Shown: positions 1-62,627, counted from the stretch's first letter. The stretch: DNA of 64,000 nucleotides from Zootoca vivipara (GCF_963506605.1 NC_083280.1:51026001-51090000); one strand, 5' to 3'. The notes: generated from the sequence alone by a model not told the origin. Numbers and translations are program-made.

Positions 1-170
1 TAAGAGCTGTTCAACAGACTTCCATGAGAAGTAATGGACTCACCTTCCTTGGAGATTTTTAAGCAGAGGTTGGATGACCACCTGTCATGGATGCTTTAGT
101 TGAGATCCCTGCATTGCAGGGGGATGGACTTAGATGATCCCTTCCAAAACTACAATTCTATGATTCTATG
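1..170 (+). mobile_element. CR1 LINE 3'-end fragment (cut by window start)
   Basis: Resembles the end of CR1 ORF2 (..ttttaagcagaggttggatg..) and the 3' UTR (cctgcattgcagggg..ggac..gatcccttcc), ending in the (attctatg)2 tail. Confidence 0.8.
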
Positions 171-2665
171 ACTTGTGCCAGAAACAAGATTCTGTGTTTC
201 TGTGGTGATATTACAGAAGCATAAAATCTACACAACAGTGCTGCATTTTAATTTTTATATTTATTCTCCTCCCCTCTCTTTATTGTTATTAATCTAATGA
301 ACTAAGTAATCATCCCTATGCCAAGAATATTTTTTATGCTTCTTATTTTATCAGTTAGCATTCTCTAGTGAAGGTTTGCTTTTTGTTGTTGTTACCATCT
401 CTGGAAGATTTTATTTATCTGGCATTCTTTTCTTAATCAGAGGAGATGCTTTCTGTATTTTCCCCTCTTCTACATAGAGAGGTGTCCAGCCCCTTCCTGT
501 TAAATTTGCAAACTGTTGCTTATTCTTGCTATCCCCAGTGGTCTGGGAGTGAAGTCCCTTGATGGTGGTGATCTTGACTCTGAAAATATGGAGCTTATTT
601 CATTAAACTTTCCTATTAGGTGATACAAGACCCTGTCCTACATACTTCCAGGAGGCAGGTGAGCAGGTGGGCTTCAGAACTGCATGGACAGACCAGTGGA
701 TTTTGTCTGTTTGGCTGAGCTAAATGCAAAAGCTCTTTTATTTGAAATTCACTAACCCTGTGAAATGGAGAGAAAATGTGCCCTGTAGGGTTACTTGAAT
801 TAAGTATCATGTTTAAATTAGGTCTCTGGAGCGGCATGATACCATGTTAGCACCCTAGAAATCCACAGCTCTGGCACATGCTTCAGCAGTGTGCTAATGC
901 TGCATATGTAGGAACTAGCATACAAACAATAGCACAATTTAAGCATCCTGCTGGCTGTATGCAACCCCTCATAGATAACACTACTTTTACATAGCCTTGT
1001 CAGGTAGGAACTAAATTTAATCCAAGTGGAAACTAGGCTTGTTAGCATAGAAGGTGTAGAGGCTGCAGGTCTTCTCTATGCAGAATTAGTTGTCACACCT
1101 CCTCCTCTGCTCCACCATCTTTATATTGGGAACCATTCAAGTATATTATATTACATTATAAAATAAATTATATTCAAGAGCTGTAAGATTGTTTTCTGTG
1201 ATGCATGGCATGTTGCATGTTCTTCCAGCACTTTTCAGGAATAAAAGTGAAGACTGACAGTAAAATATTTCTTAAGGCTCAGGGATAGTTTTATGTGCAT
1301 AATAGATGGTTATACAGGTTTATTTTACTAAAGTATCGCCACTATTCCTTATAAAAGGTACTGTAGGATATGCATTTTCTTCATCTTCAGGGATAATTAA
1401 CTGCGTGCTCATACTTTCCCCCATCTCTTATAAAGACTGATACTTTGAATTTGTATGCTCTGAAGGTCTTTCTAAACATCTGAAACTGATTTATAGGCAG
1501 GGGTGCAATTCTTCCATTTCAAGAAGAATGTGAAGTGAGGAACATGGATCCCCAGGGAATGGTGTCAAGATCTTATTAAGATGACAGGTGCAGATTTCCT
1601 GAAAATAACTGCTGATTCTTAGGACATCTTTTGTTTTTCTTAGACATATGCAGCACAGAAGCATGGTTAGATTGGAATCTGAAACTGTGTTTCCAGAACC
1701 ACAGAGATAAGGTGGATTGGGGTCTTGACCTGAAAATTCACATTTTCCATTAAATGCAATTGTGTCAAAAGGTTGCTTGTATATAGTAAATGTGACATTC
1801 GTACTGAAGATTGAACAAATCAAATGGCATCCACTTACTTCAGTGGCTTGATAGAATAAGGAAAGGCCTTTTTTTGCACACTTATTGAACTGACTAATAC
1901 AGAGGTTGGTGTAAAAGGCAAATGTTAAATAATGGCTCCAGCTAGTGGGTTGGCTGAGGTTCCTTTTTTATAATTTATGTAAAGCCTGGCATGTAGGATT
2001 TGTGCAGTATGCTTGTTAAAGTAGTCATGTGCTTGTCCAACTCTTGACCATTAAGAGTAATATGTCATCTGCCAACATGTCATCTGCCAATGGTTCTAGT
2101 ATTATGAATGAGATGTGTTTTATCCAGAAACCAAAGAACAGAAGAAGTAAGCCATGGTGGATAAATAGTCATTTTTGCAAGGAAAAATTAATTCAAAGAT
2201 AGAATGTAATAAATCAAAAGATAATGGCCAATGAAATTCAGCCCAAGATATATAATGACAGTTTATAGGGTTGCCAGTTGCTTAAACTTTATCAAAAGCC
2301 AGTTTAAATGCAGAACTTCAGCATCTATATGAGATATACAATGGCCATTAAGATTCTGCAGCTTCACAGTGCTGGCTGAGGTAAATGGCTTCCCAGAAAT
2401 TCAAATGCCGTTTTCAAACCCCGAGAGTCTTGGGGACAATCTTCACATATACATGTTTTAGTGATTAAGAAGTTGAGCTACTCTAATCAGTTTCTTTGAT
2501 GAGACAGCACTCCAGCTATCTGTTTCTTTTTCTGTTTTGTTTTTTTAACCCTCCTTGTGTTTGTGCCTGCTTTATTTGGAAGCCTTGTATTTTGCTGTGT
2601 TTCAGCTTCAGTGCAGGCGCCATTTTTATCTTTGTAATTCTCTTTCTGGATGTAACCCTCTTCAG

Positions 2666-15624: not shown

Positions 15625-16040
15625 AAATCATCAAGCTGGACCATGTGCAGAGGAGGGCAACCAAAATGATCAAGGGTCTGGAGGCGAAGCCTTATGAGGG
15701 ACAATTGAGGGAGTTGGATACCAGCTGGAAAAGAAGACACTGAGATGGGGATATGGTAGCCATCTTCAAATATCTAAATGGCTGTCACATGGAAGATGTA
15801 GCAAGGTTGTTTTCCCCTGCTCTAGAGGATAGGACCTGAACCAGTTGTTACAAGAAAATAGATTCCGACTAAATATCAGGAAGAACTTTGACAGGAAGCA
15901 GTTTGACAGTGGAATAGACTCCCTTGGAATGTGTTAGAAGCAGAGGTTGGATGGCCATCTGCTATGGATGTTTTAGTTGAAATTTCTGCATTTGCAGGGG
16001 GTTGGACCTTGGAGCTCCCAACTCTACAATTCTATAATGA
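15625..16040 (+). mobile_element. Old CR1 3' fragment
   Basis: Decayed ORF2 C-terminal sequence (gtgcagaggagggcaaccaaaatgatcaagggtctgg) running to the ctctacaattctat tail. Confidence 0.8.
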
Positions 16041-46059: not shown

Positions 46060-46724
46060 CCCTATATTCTCTGACAACAGAGATACCTCATATCTGGCAA
46101 AGCTAGCTGTTGTCGGTGTTAGCTATGATGAGATACAGTGGTGCAGATTCCTGCTACTTCATACCATCTGTGTGGATTCATTTGATTGCATTGTGCATTA
46201 TCCAGTTGTAGTTTCTTCCATATAACAGTAGCTCTACTTCCCTCAAGTAGGTCAGATGAGAGTGATTTCACTTTCCCCTGGGAATGAGAGGCTCAGTGTG
46301 AATAATCTGTACTGTGATCTCCAATGCACTAACTAGTTGAAAATCCGCTCTTTTAAAATGGGCACTCCTAGGCTAGCTGTTTTTTATCTGAATCCCCAGG
46401 AGCTTCACTGACTTGCAGAAGATTAGAATTGACTCCCCTGCATTAATTGCAGCTTCTTGTTTAAGCAATAGGTGAATGAGCGTTTGATCTCAAAGGTTGT
46501 CATCTCTCTCCAGAGAGAACCGTTATCAAAATGTCACCCGGATAACATCAAATCCAGGCTCCCAGTGGCCTCAGAGGTTAGGAAGGAAAAAGATGAACAG
46601 AACAAGGGGTATACTGAGCTTGCTGTGGTCTTAGAATCATAGAATCATAGAATCATAGAATCATAGAGTTGGAAGAGACCACAAGGGCCATCCAGTCCAA
46701 CCCCCTGCCAAGCAGGAAACACCA

Positions 46725-49646
46725 TCAAAGCATTCCTGACAGATGGCTGTCAAGCCTCTGCTTAAAGACCTCCAAAGAAGGAGACTCCACCACACTCCTT
46801 GGCAGCAAATTCCACTGCCGAACAGCTCTTACTGTCAGGAAGTTCTTCCTAATGTTTAGGTGGAATTTTCTTTCTTGTAGTTTGAATCCGTTGCTCCGTG
46901 TCCGCTTCTCTGGAGCAGCAGAAAACAACCTTTCTCCCTCCTTTATATGACATCCTTTTATATATTTGAACATGGTTATCATATCACCCCTTAACCTTCT
47001 CTTCTCCAGGCTAAACATACCCAGCTCCCTAAGCCGTTCCTCATAAGGCATCGTTTCCAGGCCTTTGACCATTTTGGTTGCCCTCTTCTGGACACGTTCC
47101 AGCTTATCAGTATCCTTCTTGAACTGTGGTGCCCAGAACTGGACACAATACTCCAGGTGAGGTCTGACCAGAGCAGAATACAGTGGTACTATTACTTCCC
47201 TTGATCTAGATGCTATACTCCTATTGATGCAGCCCAGAATTGCATTGGCTTTTTTAGCTGCTGCATCACACTGCTGACTCATGTCAAGTTTGTGGTCAAC
47301 CAAAACTCCTAGATCCTTTTCACATGTACTGCTCTCAAGCCAGGTGTCTCCCATCCTGTATCTGTGCCTTTCATTTTTTTTGCCCAAGTGTAGTACTTTA
47401 CATTTCTCCTTGTTAAAATTCATCTTGTTTGCTTTGGCCCAGTTGTCTAATCTGTTAAGGTCATTCTGAAGTGTGATCCTGTCCTCTGGGGTGTTAGCCA
47501 CCCCTCCCAACTTGGTGTCATCTGCAAACTTGCTCAGGATTCCCTCAAGCCCATCATCCAAGTCATTGATAAAGATGTTGAACAAGACTGGGCCCAAGAC
47601 AGAACCCTGTGGCACCCCACTAGTCACTACTCTCCAGGATGAGGAGGAGCCATTGATGAGCACCCTTTGGGTTCGGTCAGTAAGCCAGCTACAAATCCAC
47701 TGAATGGTAGCATTGTCTAGCCCACATTTTACCAGCTTCTTTACAAGAATATCATGGGGCACCTTGTCAAAGGCCTTGCTGAAATCAAGATAGGCTACAT
47801 CCACAGCGTTCCCTTCATCTACCAGGCTTGTAATTCTGTCAAAAAATGAGATCAGATTAGTCTGACATGACTTATTTTTCAGGAACCCATGCTGACTTTT
47901 AGTGATCACAGAGTTTCTTTCTAGGTGCTCACAGACTGTTTGCTTAATGATCTGCTCTAGAATCTTTCCTGGTATTGATGTCAGGCTGACTGGGCGGTAA
48001 TTGTTTGGGTCCTCTCTTTTCCCCTTTTTGAAAATAGGGACAACATTTGCCCTCCTCCAGTCTGCTGGAACTTCGCCTGTTCTCCAGGAATTTTCAAAGA
48101 TTATTGCCAGTGGTTCTGAAATCACCTCTGCCAGTTCTTTTAATACTCTTGGATGTAGTTCATCTGGCCCTGGAGACTTGAATACATCTAAACTAGCCAA
48201 GTATTCTTGTACTACCTCCTTACTTATTCTGGGCTGTGTTTCCCCTGCTGAATCATCTGCTCCATATTCTTCAGGTCGGGCGTTGTTTTCTTTCTTGGAG
48301 AAGACTGAGGCAAAGAAGGCATTGAGGAGTTCTGCCCTTTCTCTGTCCCCTGTTTGCATTTCACCATCTTCTCCTCTGAGTGACCCCACTGTTTCCTTGT
48401 TTTTCCTTTTGCTACGGACATACCCATAAAAGCCCTTTTTGTTGCTTTTAACCTCTCTGGCGAGCCTGAGTTCATTCTGTGCTTTAGCTTTTCTGACTTT
48501 GTCTCTACACGTGCTGGCTATATGTTTGAATTCCTCTCTGGAGATTTCCCCCCTTTTCCATTTTTTGTACATATCCCTTTTAAATCTTAACTCAGTCAAA
48601 AGTTCTTTAGATAGCCAGCCTGGCTTCTTTAGGCACCTTCCATGTTTCCGTCTCATTGGTATTGCCTGAAGTTGTGCTTTTAATATCTCCCTTTTAACAA
48701 ACTCCCAACCATCATGAACTCCCTTCCCTTTTAGTATTACTGTCCATGGGATTTCACCCAGCTTTTCCCTAAGTTTTCTGAAGTCGGCTTTTTTAAAGTC
48801 TAGAATTTGGACCTTAGTATGCTTGGTTGCTCCTTTCCGCTGGATAATAAACTCCAGAAGAGCATGGTCACTCCCACCTAATGATCCTGCCACTTCTACC
48901 CCACTAACCAAGTCATCACCATTGGTTAGGACCAGATCTAAAATGGCTGATCCTCTTGTTGCTTCTCCCACTTTCTGGACAATGAAGTTGTCTGCAAGGC
49001 CAGTGAGGAATCTGTTCGACCTTATGCTCTTGGCTGAGTTTGACATCCAACAAATATCAGGATAGTTGAAATCCCCCATTACTACTATCTCACTTCCTTT
49101 GGAATGCTTGGCCATCTGTTCCAGGAAGGCATCATCTGTGTCCTCAGTTTGGCTTGGGGATCTATAGTAAACTCCCACAATGAGGTCACTGTTGTTTTTC
49201 TCTCCCTTAATTTTGACCCAGATACTCTCAATTTGGCTTTGAAGTTTTAAATCCTGGATCTCTTCACAGGTATACATATCCCTAACATATAAAGCTACTC
49301 CTCCTCCTTTCCTGTTTGGTCTATTTCTCTTAAATAGATTGTATCCCTCTATTACTACATTCCAGTCATGAGACTCATCCCACCAGGTTTCAGTGATGCC
49401 TATTATGTCATATTTAGTTTGCTGTACCAAGAGCTCAAGTTCATCTTGTTTATTTCCCATGCTCTGTGCATTAGTATACAGACATTGAAGACCGTTGATC
49501 ATTCCCCCATGTCTCTTATTTAAGGATATTTTCGTCCCACCACTAGGTCTGCATGCTGCTTGCTCCATTTGGTCCTTGACATTTGGATGATCATCTTCAG
49601 CATTTGATAGACTCCTACCTTCAGGACCACTGTCTCCCTCCCCCAC
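46725..49646 (-). CDS. CR1 ORF2: APE endonuclease plus reverse transcriptase (start uncertain; the track start is GTG)
   Basis: 973-aa open frame. EN motifs YTNAQS, ITETW, GDFN, LDL, SDH; RT motifs [23 protein letters not shown]. Confidence 0.95.
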
Positions 49647-49651
49647 ATAAG

Positions 49652-50692
49652 TCAGTTTAAAGCCCTCCTGATGAGGTTTTTGAGTTTTGTGGCAAAAACA
49701 TTCCTCCCAACTTTTGTGAGGTGCAGTCCATCACTTGCCAGAAGTCCATCTTCAAGAAACTGCAGACCGTGATCTAGGAATCCAAACCGTTCCTGTTTGC
49801 ACCATTTGCGAAGCCAGTTGTTCACTTCCCCTATTTTTCCCTCTCTCCCTGGGCCATGTCGTTCAACTGGGAGGACAGAAGAGATGACAATTTGTGCATC
49901 TAATTGCTTCAACTTCCTGCCCAGAGCCTCATAATCATTTTTGATCTTCTGTAAGCTATGGCTTGCAGTGTCATTGGTTCCCACATGCACCAAAAGGAAG
50001 GGGTATTTGTCGGTGGGTTTTATGATTCCTTGCAGCCGTTCTGTTACATCTTTGATCTTGGCCCCAGGTAGACAGCACACCTCTCGAGACATCTTGTCAG
50101 GCCCACAGATCACTGCTTCTGTACCCCTCAGTAGGGAATCCCCAATCACCACTACACGCCTCTTCATGGGCTTGGTTGGGATACTTCTATGTGCTGTCCC
50201 TTCCAAGGTTACCTGCATATTTCCAGAGGACTGACTTGGTTGCTCGTCTTCATATTCCTCATCAACTGTGATGAGGGAGAGATCCTCAGGTGGAGTCTGT
50301 TCCTCGTCTTCCATGAGCACTTCAAAACGGTTGTGTAATTCTAAGCACTCAGAGCGATCCCTGGGCCTTCTACTTCTATGAGTCACGTTCCTCCATACAT
50401 CTGGCTGCTGTGTTGGGGAACTGACCTCCTCCTCAGGGAGATCCCCTGTCTCCTCCTTGGTGCAGACAGTGTGCTCTGCTGCATCCAAGAAAAGCTCCAG
50501 TTCTTTAATTCTCTGGAGCGTAGATACACGCCCCTGAAGCTGCTGCACCTTCTCTTCCAGAAGGGCAACCTTGTTTTCTAGTAGGGCAACCAACTTACAA
50601 TTGTTGCAGGTGTAGCTACCCACATCCTTTGGCAAGAAAACAAACATTGCACAGGAATTGCAGGTGACAATGGTTGTTCCCTCCACCTCCAT
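49652..50692 (-). CDS. CR1 ORF1: zinc finger/leucine zipper plus SGNH esterase-like domain
   Basis: CxxC..CxxC, heptad leucines, GDS..HVGTND..DGLH motifs; strong Kozak context aagATGG. Confidence 0.93.
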
Positions 50693-50769
50693 CTTGAAAA
50701 CCTTGAGGTCAAGGGGGAAAGAGGAAGAGGCCTAGGTCCCCCCTAACAAACGTATGAGACTTGCTGCTA

Positions 50770-52487
50770 TCCAAGCTCTGACTAGCTCCGCCCACAGCTA
50801 ATCACCTGAACTTCCTGACTCACACTTCTAGGTGAAAGGTCACAGCCAGAAACAAACAAGGTCACAGCCAGAAACAAACACCCACACAAGCCTGGACAGT
50901 CACCCAAATCCAAGAGGCAGCAGCCCTAGAAAACCAGCACAAGCACACAAACAAGTAAGAAAACAAATAAGCACACAAACTTACTCACACACAGCCCCAA
51001 AAGACAAAACCACAAAACCTACAGAGTGTCTCCCAAGCTCAGCTCACCTTCTGCTCCTTCCTCAGTCACTGCACTCCAAGCTCTGACTAGCTCCGCCCAC
51101 AGCTAATCACCTGAACTTCCTGACTCACACTTCTAGGTGAAAGGTCACAGCCAGAAACAAACAAGGTCACAGCCAGAAACAAACACCCACACAAGCCTGG
51201 ACAGTCACCCAAATCCAAGAGGCAGCAGCCCTAGAAAACCAGCACAAGCACACAAACAAGTAAGAAAACAAATAAGCACACAAACTTACTCACACACAGC
51301 CCCAAAAGACAAAACCACAAAACCTACAGAGTGTCTCCCAAGCTCAGCTCACCTTCTGCTCCTTCCTCAGTCACTGCACTCCAAGCTCTGACTAGCTCCG
51401 CCCACAGCTAATCACCTGAACTTCCTGACTCACACTTCTAGGTGAAAGGTCACAGCCAGAAACAAACAAGGTCACAGCCAGAAACAAACACCCACACAAG
51501 CCTGGACAGTCACCCAAATCCAAGAGGCAGCAGCCCTAGAAAACCAGCACAAGCACACAAACAAGTAAGAAAACAAATAAGCACACAAACTTACTCACAC
51601 ACAGCCCCAAAAGACAAAACCACAAAACCTACAGAGTGTCTCCCAAGCTCAGCTCACCTTCTGCTCCTTCCTCAGTCACTGCACTCCAAGCTCTGACTAG
51701 CTCCGCCCACAGCTAATCACCTGAACTTCCTGACTCACACTTCTAGGTGAAAGGTTACAGCCAGAAACAAACAAGGTCACAGCCAGAAACAAACACCCAC
51801 ACAAGCCTGGACAGTCACCCAAATCCAAGAGGCAGCAGCCCTAGAAAACCAGCACAAGCACACAAACAAGTAAGAAAACAAATAAGCACACAAACTTACT
51901 CACACACAGCCCCAAAAGACAAAACCACAAAACCTACAGAGTGTCTCCCAAGCTCAGCTCACCTTCTGCTCCTTCCTCAGTCACTGCACTCCAAGCTCTG
52001 ACTAGCTCCGCCCACAGCTAATCACCTGAACTTCCTGACTCACACTTCTAGGTGAAAGGTCACAGCCAGAAACAAACAAGGTCACAGCCAGAAACAAACA
52101 CCCACACAAGCCTGGACAGTCACCCAAATCCAAGAGGCAGCAGCCCTAGAAAACCAGCACAAGCACACAAACAAGTAAGAAAACAAATAAGCACACAAAC
52201 TTACTCACACACAGCCCCAAAAGACAAAACCACAAAACCTACAGAGTGTCTCCCAAGCTCAGCTCACCTTCTGCTCCTTCCTCAGTCACTGCACTCCAAG
52301 CTCTGACTAGCTCCGCCCACAGCTAATCACCTGAACTTCCTGACTCACACTTCTAGGTGAAAGGTCACAGCCAGAAACAAACAAGGTCACAGCCAGAAAC
52401 AAACACCCACACAAGCCTGGACAGTCACCCAAATCCAAGAGGCAGCAGCCCTTCTGCTCCTTCCTCAGTCACTGCACTCCAAGCTCT
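50770..52487 (-). repeat. Tandem array in the CR1 5' UTR: five 305-bp units plus one 183-bp internally deleted unit
   Basis: Period 305 (50770, 51075, 51380, 51685, 51990, 52295). The only substitution noticed is C>T at 51756. The terminal unit lacks 122 nt. Confidence 0.97.
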
Positions 52488-52787
52488 TGAACAACTCAGA
52501 TATTTTTTTAATAGTCAGTTGAATTTCCCAGGGATCCCCAAATGGGTAATGGAAGCCACTCTAATTAGTTGTCTGAAATGGAACTGTTCTGTTTTACTCT
52601 GACATAGGCTTGCTGTCAGAGGGGCTCGAGGAGGATAATGGCTAATTTCCCTCTAGACTGAGACTATTGCTGGGTTATAGGTTTTTTGTGGTGTCCTTCC
52701 CTGGTTGCTTTTTTTTCTTTGCATTTTTTAAAAGCAGAATTCACCTAACACCCCTTGACAAGTAGTGCATGTATTTTGTACTCAGGT

Positions 52788-53376: not shown

Positions 53377-53765
53377 AGAATCATAGAATTGTAGAGTTGG
53401 AAGGAATCCAGAGGGTCATCTAGTCCAGCCCCCTGCAATGCAGGAATCTCAGCTAAAGATCCATCACAGATGGCCATTCAACCTCTGCTTAAAGAACTCC
53501 AATGAAGGAGAGTCCACTACCTTCCAAGGGAGTCCATTCCACTGTCAAACAGATCTTACCATCAGAAAGTTCTTCCGGATGTTTAGTCGGAATCTCCTTT
53601 ATTGTAACTTGAATCCACTGCTTTGCATCCTAGCCTCCAGAGCGGGAGAAAATAAGCTTACTGTATCACACTGTTGACTCATGTGTAGCTTGTGGTCCAC
53701 CAAGACCCCTGGATCTTTTTCACATGTACTGCTGGCAAGCCAGGTGGGCCTATCTTATATTTGTG
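53377..53765 (-). mobile_element. Older CR1 3' fragment with an internal deletion
   Basis: agaatcatagaattgtag tail; homologous to 46660-46930, then jumps to sequence homologous to about 47265-47365. Confidence 0.82.
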
Positions 53766-62475: not shown

Positions 62476-62627
62476 ATCACAGAATCACAGACTTGTAGAG
62501 TTGGAAGTGACCATGAGGATCATCTAGTCCAACCCCCTGCAATGCAGGAATCTTTCACCCAACCTGGGACTCAAACTCACAACCCTGAGATTAAGAGCTT
62601 CACGTTCTACCAACTGAGCTATCCCCT
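62476..62627 (-). mobile_element. SINE with a tRNA-Lys(CTT)-derived head and a CR1 3' tail
   Basis: Minus strand gatagctcagttggtagaacgtgaagctCTTaatctcagggttgtgagtttgagtccc.., then gattcctgcattgcagggggttggactagatg..(attctgtg)n. Confidence 0.8.

What the first reader, a model, noticed from the sequence alone, without database searches (positions are those of the whole stretch)
50770..52487. Stack of expendable promoters: each unit ends in a promoter-like module, and the insertion begins exactly at its initiator
Seen: on the element strand the last ~45 nt of every unit are gTGAGTCAGGAAGTtCAGGTGattagctgtGGGCGGagctagtc. These are an AP-1 site overlapping an ETS core, an E-box and a GC box. They are followed by gtc|Aga, which fits the BBCABW initiator, and its A starts the next unit. 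The 5' end of the insertion (52487) is that A (Agagcttgga), and the unique leader before ORF1 (50779) begins with the same 10 nt. The whole ~1.8-kb leader has no AUG before ORF1, and each unit has only one CpG. Known: mouse L1 uses tandem ~200-bp monomers, and Drosophila HeT-A uses a 3' promoter to drive its downstream neighbour; CR1 is generally described with a short, non-repeated 5' UTR. Inference: unit n drives transcription from unit n+1, so each retrotransposition uses up at least one promoter unless the array re-expands. The low CpG content may make it a poor target for methylation silencing.
Basis: partly seen in the sequence, partly recalled or inferred. Interest (0 to 1): 0.88.

Follow-up and report, generated by a model that had tools for sequence, protein, structure and literature searches.

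The report
Lizard CR1 with tandem monomer leader
A young, intact CR1 jumping gene of a lacertid lizard carries a leader of six tandem 305-bp units that looks and behaves like the stacked "monomer" promoter of mouse L1, but promoter activity itself is still inferred, not shown.

Summary
On the minus strand, 52487-50780 holds six head-to-tail units. Five are 305 nt, with one difference among them. All six end in the same 43-nt AP-1/ETS/E-box/GC-box cluster. An 87-nt unique leader follows, then intact ORF1 and ORF2 and a CR1 3' end.

ORF1 is 99% identical to Zootoca vivipara proteins annotated on three chromosomes.

New support:
- The 5'-terminal unit lacks exactly 122 nt, bounded by the best splice donor and acceptor of the unit. 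At least part of the array therefore passed through a sense Pol II transcript.
- The same junction occurs in RNA reads.
- In a DNA run, units are about four times as abundant as the unique leader, so arrays are a family trait and not a local duplication.
- The insertion starts at one of only two initiator matches in 305 positions.

Weaker than claimed:
- Absence of AUG is not significant (P=0.155 with dinucleotide shuffles), and neither is the low CpG content against the genome background.
- No pile-up of read starts was seen.
- "Unit n drives unit n+1" is untested.
- Promoter loss at each jump is already the mouse L1 model.

I found no earlier description for CR1. The scan noted a similar CR1 array on another piece of this genome (s1-853978, unchecked).

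The parts
52305..52487 (-). 5'-terminal monomer, 183 nt. A 37-nt mini-exon (52487-52451) is joined directly to unit positions 160-305, so the 122-nt intron is missing. The first base, A at 52487, is the 5' end of the insertion.
50780..52304 (-). Five complete 305-nt monomers (starts 52304, 51999, 51694, 51389, 51084), identical except G>A at position 244 of the unit starting at 51999.
52305..52347 (-). Promoter-like module 1 (AP-1/ETS/E-box/GC box, ending in GTC before the next unit's A).
52000..52042 (-). Promoter-like module 2.
51695..51737 (-). Promoter-like module 3.
51390..51432 (-). Promoter-like module 4.
51085..51127 (-). Promoter-like module 5.
50780..50822 (-). Promoter-like module 6, directly upstream of the unique leader.
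52146..52267 (-). 122-nt GT-AG intron of monomer 2 (AAG|GTGAGC ... TTTTCTAG|GG), retained in the DNA.
51841..51962 (-). Intron of monomer 3.
51536..51657 (-). Intron of monomer 4.
51231..51352 (-). Intron of monomer 5.
50926..51047 (-). Intron of monomer 6. RNA reads and contigs skip exactly this segment.
50693..50779 (-). Unique 87-nt leader ('tether'). Its first 10 nt repeat the monomer start. It has no ATG and one CpG.
49652..50692 (-). ORF1, 346 aa, intact. It has an N-terminal Cys motif, a coiled coil and an SGNH/GDSL esterase domain. It is 99% identical to Zootoca vivipara XP_060129222.
46725..49646 (-). ORF2, 973 aa, intact: apurinic-type endonuclease plus reverse transcriptase.
46633..46724 (-). 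CR1 3' UTR: a hairpin followed by the (ATTCTATG)4 microsatellite. There is no poly(A).

Best explanation
This is the 5' untranslated region of a young, coding-intact CR1 LINE of a lacertid lizard (Zootoca vivipara or a very close relative). It is built like the monomer promoter of mouse L1.

Each 305-nt monomer has three parts:
- a 37-nt mini-exon that begins with an initiator-like A;
- a 122-nt functional GT-AG intron;
- a 146-nt segment that ends in a dense cluster of AP-1, ETS, E-box and GC-box sites, 9-43 nt upstream of the next monomer's A.

RNA polymerase II most likely starts at these A residues, driven by the cluster just upstream and possibly helped by the other monomers. The RNA that made this copy began at such an A. 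Its cap-proximal intron was spliced, or its first donor was joined to a later acceptor. It was then reverse-transcribed to its very 5' end.

Shown: the structure, the RNA passage and splicing, the family-wide abundance of the unit, and sense transcripts. Inferred: promoter activity, the exact start site, which monomer drives which start, and loss and regrowth of monomers.
For: - Structure: six units with exact modules.
- Splicing: the deletion in unit 1 coincides with the joint-best donor (AAG|GTGAGC, 8/9 to consensus) and the best acceptor of the unit. The same 122-nt skip is seen in 5 RNA reads of run X24 (3 distinct starts), where intron depth is 0-1 against 6-9 on the exons. It is also in an RNA? 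contig of X16. In DNA contigs of X13 it has depth 405 against about 1e5 for the unspliced form, so it is strongly enriched in RNA.
- Strand: all junction reads have the first mate on +. With GT-AG on the minus strand, this shows element-sense RNA.
- Tandem junction reads ('goes back 305') occur in X23 RNA.
- Abundance: 480 DNA contigs of X13 match one unit. Summed depth is about 1.4e5 for the unit against about 3.6e4 for the unique leader.
- The 5' end lies on one of only 2 BBCABW matches in 305 positions. It is within 10-16 nt of the phase at which the array meets the leader.
- In X24, sense depth falls from 7.6 on the mini-exon to 1 over the upstream module.
- All four motifs fell within 45 nt in 0 of 5000 shuffles, though this test is post hoc.
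- The family is young and multi-copy: at least 4 intact ORF1 genes on 3 chromosomes of Z. vivipara.
- Mouse L1 precedent.
Against: - No pile-up of read starts at any A was reported, though depth was very low because only about 6% of each RNA run was read (table 6).
- At least one spliced read extends 14 nt upstream of the A.
- A GC box at -14..-9 and the absence of a TATA box are unusual promoter geometry.
- The variant most expressed in X23 has GGAAGTT changed to GGAGGGA, which destroys the ETS core.
- Many X23 reads stem from a unit fragment embedded in unrelated sequence (loose ends at 50955 and 50832).
- The 5' border is not confirmed by a target-site duplication.
- Only one copy could be read directly.
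Confidence: 0.55

Rival explanations
1. Internal promoter. Each monomer carries what it needs downstream of its own first base, as in human L1 or Drosophila jockey-type elements. The motif cluster acts as an orientation- and distance-tolerant enhancer.
For: - LINEs in general rely on internal promoters (for L1).
- The spliced junction is present in DNA contigs in at least three sequence variants: one joint with depth 405 plus two loose-end contigs at 51047. This is easier to explain if spliced units are copied on.
- Chicken CR1-B 5' UTR alone drives a reporter (PMC2734521).
Against: - The recognisable factor sites are concentrated upstream of the A, not downstream.
- The first 37 nt plus the GT-rich intron hold no obvious site cluster.
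- Recurrent independent splicing would also give several DNA variants.
Confidence: 0.2
2. Passive repeated leader. The array is a tandemly duplicated piece of 5' UTR, possibly captured host or foreign sequence, with no promoter role. Transcription starts elsewhere (in the flank, or driven by the unique leader or the start of ORF1). The 5' end at the unit boundary is chance 5' truncation.
For: - No direct evidence for a start site.
- The ATG and CpG statistics are not significant.
- Motif matching is post hoc.
- Chicken CR1 subfamilies are known to swap 5' UTRs (Haas et al. 2001, as cited).
Against: - The chance of truncation at an initiator match is 2/305.
- The chance of falling within 16 nt of the junction phase is about 5%.
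- A 37-nt first exon followed by a used donor fits a true RNA 5' end.
- About four units per leader genome-wide suggests that arrays are maintained.
Confidence: 0.15
3. The number of units at this locus (not their existence) is a local post-insertion expansion or an assembly error in a run of five nearly identical 305-nt copies.
For: - Units 2-6 differ at a single base.
- Short-read contigs collapse the array (table 8: no piece spans it).
Against: - A very young insertion from a homogenised source gives the same picture.
- Another array of almost the same length (1708 letters) was noted elsewhere in this genome (s1-853978; unchecked).
- This rival does not touch the splice or start-site evidence.
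Confidence: 0.07

Closest known systems
Mouse and rat L1 monomer promoters (A, Gf and Tf monomers, about 200 bp; tether; ORF1)
   Same: Head-to-tail monomers lie upstream of a short non-repeated tether and ORF1. Factor sites sit in every monomer. Starts inside the array mean daughters lose 5' monomers, and regrowth by template switching or recombination has been proposed.
   Different: The LINE clade is different (CR1, with esterase-type ORF1 and a microsatellite 3' end). The monomers are 305 nt, GT-rich and carry one CpG instead of forming a CpG island. Each monomer holds a functional intron. The 5' end lies exactly on the monomer border. Activity is untested here.
5' UTRs of vertebrate CR1 elements (chicken CR1-B and CR1-F, turtle PsCR1, pufferfish Maui)
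   Same: Same clade. E boxes are described as a recurrent feature. AP-1 sites occur in CR1-F. 32-bp direct repeats occur in turtle and pufferfish. The 5' UTR acts as promoter in chicken CR1-B (PMC2734521).
   Different: Those 5' UTRs are about 240 bp, with short repeats at most. Here there is a 1.8-kb array of six long units, each with an intron. No sequence comparison was possible with the tools at hand.
Spliced integrated retrotransposed elements (SpIREs) of human L1 (PMC5860796)
   Same: A DNA copy lacks a segment bounded by a splice donor and acceptor inside the LINE's own 5' region. This proves that a spliced RNA was retrotransposed.
   Different: In human L1 the splice removes promoter sequence and cripples the copy. 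Here only the intron of the terminal monomer is gone, and all six modules are kept.
Drosophila HeT-A telomeric element
   Same: The logic is the same: a promoter at the end of one repeat drives the next repeat downstream.
   Different: The HeT-A promoter is in the 3' end of a whole upstream element in a telomeric array. Here the repeats are sub-units within one element's 5' leader. This comparison rests on general knowledge and was not tested.

Membership tests
CR1-clade LINE | ORF2 with an apurinic-type endonuclease followed by a reverse transcriptase | tested here: met
   Exo_endo_phos E=1.1e-17 at residues 59-261 and RVT_1 E=4.8e-35 at residues 541-757.
CR1-clade LINE | ORF1 of the CR1 type (zinc-finger-like N-terminus, SGNH/GDSL esterase) | tested here: met
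   Lipase_GDSL_2 E=2.4e-09, above the curated cut-off. Relatives are named SGNH esterase-domain proteins in lizards, turtles and birds.
CR1-clade LINE | 3' end with a hairpin plus an 8-nt microsatellite, and no poly(A) | tested here: met
   (ATTCTATG)4 at 46632-46667. A stem GGGUUGGA...UCCAACUC lies just upstream, with a modest z-score of -1.3.
Monomer-type LINE promoter (mouse L1 kind) | Tandem head-to-tail monomers upstream of a non-repeated tether and ORF1 | tested here: met
   Six units plus an 87-nt tether.
Monomer-type LINE promoter (mouse L1 kind) | Arrays present, and variable in number, across copies of the family | tested here: inconclusive
   The unit-to-leader depth ratio is about 4 in DNA contigs, and tandem junctions occur in RNA. 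Individual other copies could not be read.
Monomer-type LINE promoter (mouse L1 kind) | Transcription starts inside the monomers | tested here: inconclusive
   The 5' end lies on an initiator match (2/305). Depth drops upstream of the A in X24, but no pile-up of starts was reported at the depth available.
Monomer-type LINE promoter (mouse L1 kind) | Each monomer adds promoter activity | not testable with these tools
   This needs reporter assays.
Monomer-type LINE promoter (mouse L1 kind) | Monomers are CpG islands, silenced by methylation | tested here: not met
   One CpG per 305 nt, o/e 0.07.
Spliced retrotransposed copy (SpIRE-like) | Deletion bounded by a canonical donor and acceptor, and the same junction found in RNA | tested here: met
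   AAG|GTGAGC...TTTTCTAG|GG are the top-scoring sites of the unit. The 122-nt skip is seen in X24 RNA reads.
HeT-A-type 3' promoter | Promoter located in the 3' end of the element, driving a separate downstream element | tested here: not met
   The modules lie only in the 5' leader, and none lies in the 3' UTR.

The most novel reading that the evidence does not exclude
A CR1 lineage has independently invented a stacked promoter in which every monomer is a complete small transcription unit: a factor-site cluster, an initiator, a 37-nt exon and an intron.

Monomer borders coincide with RNA 5' ends because arrays regrow when reverse transcriptase, on reaching the cap end of one RNA, jumps onto another CR1 RNA. 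The array would therefore be both consumed (by starts inside it) and rebuilt (by template jumps).

Being nearly free of CpG, it would escape the CpG-methylation route that silences mammalian L1 monomers.
Probability: 0.3. Interest if true: 0.65.

Novelty: new variant of a known kind. Interest (0 to 1): 0.5.

Why it matters
- LINEs lose everything upstream of their start site at each jump, and how they keep a promoter is a basic problem. Monomer stacks were known as the rodent L1 answer. A second, independent case in the CR1 clade of a reptile would show that this solution is convergent. It differs in composition (almost no CpG) and has an intron in every monomer.
- It would give a natural contrast for testing how such promoters are silenced without CpG islands.
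- The spliced terminal monomer is a built-in marker of the RNA's 5' end, which makes the start-site question answerable by a simple genome survey.
- The element is coding-intact and belongs to a family with near-identical copies on several chromosomes. It is therefore a candidate for ongoing CR1 activity and insertion polymorphism in lacertids.

Tried and rejected
Exact-pattern scans of metagenome and viral contigs with the first 29 nt of the unit gave 0 hits. An ORF1-based scan of metagenome contigs gave no relative.
- Rfam on 46500-52700: no match at E<=0.1.
- Other copies of the leader in the window: none, only old CR1 3' fragments.
- Target-site duplication: none found, only 6-nt chance matches at the wrong distance.
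- 'No AUG' as a sign of selection: dropped, because P=0.155 under dinucleotide shuffles and the antisense strand also has no ATG.
- Low CpG as a special feature: not significant against the window's background.
- Loose ends of RNA reads at 50955 (unit position 130) and 50832 (position 253) were considered as alternative splice sites or lariat reads. This was rejected because there is no AG or GT at those positions and the orientation is wrong for a lariat. They look like a unit fragment embedded in other transcribed sequence.
- Literature: four full-text searches found no description of a monomer array in a CR1 element.

Full report
**What is there**

Read on the minus strand, the window holds a complete non-LTR retrotransposon from 52487 to 46633. 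Its parts, in order:
- Six head-to-tail units (52487-50780).
- An 87-nt unique leader (50779-50693).
- ORF1, 346 aa (50692-49652).
- ORF2, 973 aa (49646-46725).
- A 92-nt 3' UTR that ends in (ATTCTATG)4 without poly(A).

ORF1 has an SGNH/GDSL esterase domain. ORF2 has an apurinic-type endonuclease and a reverse transcriptase. A hairpin sits just before the microsatellite. These are the defining features of the CR1 clade.

ORF1 is 342/346 identical to Zootoca vivipara XP_060129222 and differs by one residue from another annotated protein. At least four intact ORF1 genes of this cluster lie on three Z. vivipara chromosomes. The next relatives are from Podarcis muralis (80%) and Lacerta agilis. 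The window therefore comes from Z. vivipara or a very close relative, and the family is young and multi-copy.

**Check of the observation**

Tandem Repeats Finder gives a period of 305, 5.5 copies and 99% matches. The string AGAGCTTGGA marks seven starts: 52487, 52304, 51999, 51694, 51389, 51084 and 50779. The last one opens the unique leader. Units 2-6 are 305 nt and differ at a single base.

The 43-nt module occurs six times without a mismatch, against 0 expected. Counted from the next unit's first A, the motifs lie at:
- TGAGTCA: -43..-37
- CAGGAAGT: -38..-31
- CAGGTG: -29..-24
- GGGCGG: -14..-9

GTCAGA fits BBCABW, and only two of the 305 positions of a unit do so, positions 1 and 15. In 5000 dinucleotide-preserving shuffles of a unit, the four motifs never fell within 45 nt of each other. 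This is a post hoc test.

The leader of 1795 nt has no ATG, and each unit has one CpG. All statements of fact in the finding hold.

- Absence of ATG is not beyond composition. The unit has only three AT dinucleotides. Dinucleotide shuffles give zero ATG in 15.5% of trials, and the antisense strand has none either.
- CpG o/e is 0.07 in the unit, 0.16-0.25 in the ORFs and 0.23 in the rest of the window. That is one CpG where about 3.4 are expected, which is not significant.
- No target-site duplication confirms the 5' border.
- The claim that CR1 leaders are short and unrepeated needs a qualifier. Turtle and pufferfish CR1 elements are reported to have 32-bp direct repeats. E boxes are called a recurrent CR1 feature, and chicken CR1-F has AP-1 sites (PMC2734521).

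**The spliced terminal unit**

Unit 1 is 183 nt. It lacks unit positions 38-159. Of the four placements allowed by a 3-nt overlap, one is AAG|GTGAGC...TTTTCTAG|GG. Within the unit this donor is one of two with 8/9 matches to MAG|GTRAGT, and the acceptor shares the highest pyrimidine score. A CTTAC branch-point candidate lies 30 nt upstream of the acceptor (read).

The first-stage reader noted this separately (s1-854790), and I confirm it. It matters for the present finding. It shows that at least the first unit and an acceptor-bearing unit were in the RNA template, that the RNA was element-sense, and that it was a Pol II transcript seen by the spliceosome. The array is thus not purely a duplication made after insertion. 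Either the cap-proximal intron was removed, or the first donor was joined to the acceptor of a later unit, which would delete whole units. The DNA product is the same in both cases.

**Evidence from public reads (one call allowed; stretch 50560-51135 = module 5, unit 6, leader, start of ORF1)**

DNA contigs of run X13:
- 480 contigs match the stretch.
- Summed depth is 0.6-2.6e5 over the unit, 2.3-4.7e4 over the unique leader and 2.9-6.2e4 over the start of ORF1.
- The tool warns that this is a poor copy-number measure. Even so, a ratio of about four units per leader is not what a single local expansion would give.

RNA:
- Only about 6% of each raw-read run was read, giving 70 reads (X23) and 25 reads (X24).
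- X23 has five reads across a unit-to-unit junction ('goes back 305').
- X24 has five reads (three start places) that skip exactly 122 nt with CT..AC ends on the plus strand, which is GT..AG on the element strand.
- Depth in X24 is 6-9 on both exons and 0-1 in the intron.
- The same joint is in an RNA? contig (X16). In DNA contigs it has depth 405, about 0.4% of the unspliced form. Two further DNA contigs show a variant of it.
- The spliced form is therefore rare in DNA and dominant in one RNA sample. This argues for real splicing, although expression of a copy that is already intron-less cannot be excluded.
- All junction reads have the first mate on +, so that class is element-sense. It dominates in both runs.

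Start site:
- The tool reports no place where five or more molecules begin.
- In X24, sense depth falls from 7.6 on the mini-exon to 3.7 and then 1 over the upstream module. In X23 it falls from 9.9 to 4.
- One spliced read reaches 14 nt upstream of the A.
- This is compatible with starts near the unit border plus some read-through, but it is too thin to count as a test.

**Things that complicate the picture**

- The bin that spans the junction between array and leader (50760-50779) has only about 6e3 depth in DNA. One DNA contig and two RNA reads show another junction: unit positions 1-16, then 36 nt that include CGGCGCGCGC, then the leader from 50767. Most family members therefore seem to have a slightly longer leader with a CpG-rich block, which this copy lacks.
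- All 11 X23 reads over the module carry GGAAGTT changed to GGAGGGA. This removes the ETS core, and the variant is almost absent from the DNA contigs.
- Much of the X23 signal comes from a unit fragment (positions 130-253) flanked by unrelated sequence.
- At unit positions 17 and 76, most genomic units differ from those of this copy, so this copy belongs to a minority subfamily.

**How it most likely works**

Three indirect facts point to the boundary A as a transcription start:
- The insertion begins there, and that base is one of 2/305 initiator matches.
- A 37-nt first exon followed by a donor that was used fits a capped 5' end.
- The array meets the unique leader 10 nt (this copy) or 16 nt (the other form) after such an A. 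The period of the array is therefore in phase with the element's 5' terminus. The chance of this is about 3-7%.

The last point also suggests how arrays grow. If reverse transcriptase reaches the 5' end of one RNA and continues on a second CR1 RNA, the joint falls exactly at a start site. This is the template-switch route discussed for mouse L1. It is an inference.

However, the GC box at -14..-9 is unusually close, and there is no TATA box.

I put 0.55 on a monomer promoter with starts at the boundary A. I put 0.2 on an internal-promoter version, 0.15 on a passive repeated leader, and less than 0.1 on the local unit number being an artefact.

**Comparison with what is known**

- In function and layout the closest system is the rodent L1 monomer array with its tether. 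The 'each jump uses up a promoter' idea is the published monomer-loss model for mouse L1 (bioRxiv 10.1101/2022.08.06.500894).
- It is not a member of that family. The element is CR1, the monomers are unrelated in kind (GT-rich, one CpG, no CpG island), and each has an intron.
- The intron-less terminal unit is the CR1 counterpart of human L1 SpIREs (PMC5860796), except that here no module is lost.
- HeT-A shares only the logic of a repeat that drives its downstream neighbour.
- Four full-text searches found no description of long monomer arrays in CR1. Boissinot and Sookdeo report no tandem duplication in lizard L1 5' UTRs.
- The scan itself noted a 'CR1 LINE with a rodent-L1-style tandem monomer promoter' on another piece of this genome (s1-853978) and an L2 with a monomer promoter (s1-853145). 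Both are unchecked.

**Verdict**

It is a genuine family feature and most probably a convergent monomer-type promoter, that is, a new variant of a known kind. The mechanism is plausible but unproven.

**Limits**

Noticed in passing
window 50836-50880 and the same place in every unit (unit positions about 205-250): Each unit holds a perfect 22-nt tandem duplication (GTTTGTTTCTGGCTGTGACCTT x2). It places two AGGTCA nuclear-receptor half-sites on the antisense strand 22 nt apart, one of them as CAAGGTCA. No test of meaning was made.
   Followed up: partly
window 50767-50779 (junction of array and leader): Reads show another junction form in other copies: unit positions 1-16, then 36 nt that include CGGCGCGCGC, then the leader. 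DNA depth over this copy's own junction is only about one sixth of that of the leader, so this copy seems to be a deletion variant.
   Followed up: partly
window 50809-50812 (module 6): All 11 RNA reads of run X23 over the module carry three changes that turn GGAAGTT into GGAGGGA and destroy the ETS core. The variant is nearly absent from the DNA contigs of X13. It probably comes from one expressed locus.
   Followed up: no
window 50801-50809 and the same place in every module (unit position 279|280): The E-box CAGGTG is at the same time a strong splice-donor candidate, CAG|GTGATT, with 8/9 matches to consensus. That equals the donor that was actually used. Whether it is used is unknown.
   Followed up: no
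window 50832 and 50955: RNA reads in two runs break off at unit positions 253 and 130 into unrelated sequence, with different partners in the two runs. There is no splice signal at these places. They are probably unit fragments embedded in other transcripts.
   Followed up: partly
window 35-171, 15633-15933, 53377-53765, 62476-62550: Old, 72-83% similar fragments of CR1 3' ends lie on both strands. One is only about 900 bp upstream of the young insertion.
   Followed up: no
window 50597, 51009, 51068: At these places this copy carries the minority base. All or most DNA contigs of X13 have G (plus strand) instead. This marks the copy as a member of a small subfamily.
   Followed up: no
window 46633-52487: Another first-stage note says the element lies antisense within TRUB1 (s1-854937). 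I did not verify the host gene.
   Followed up: no
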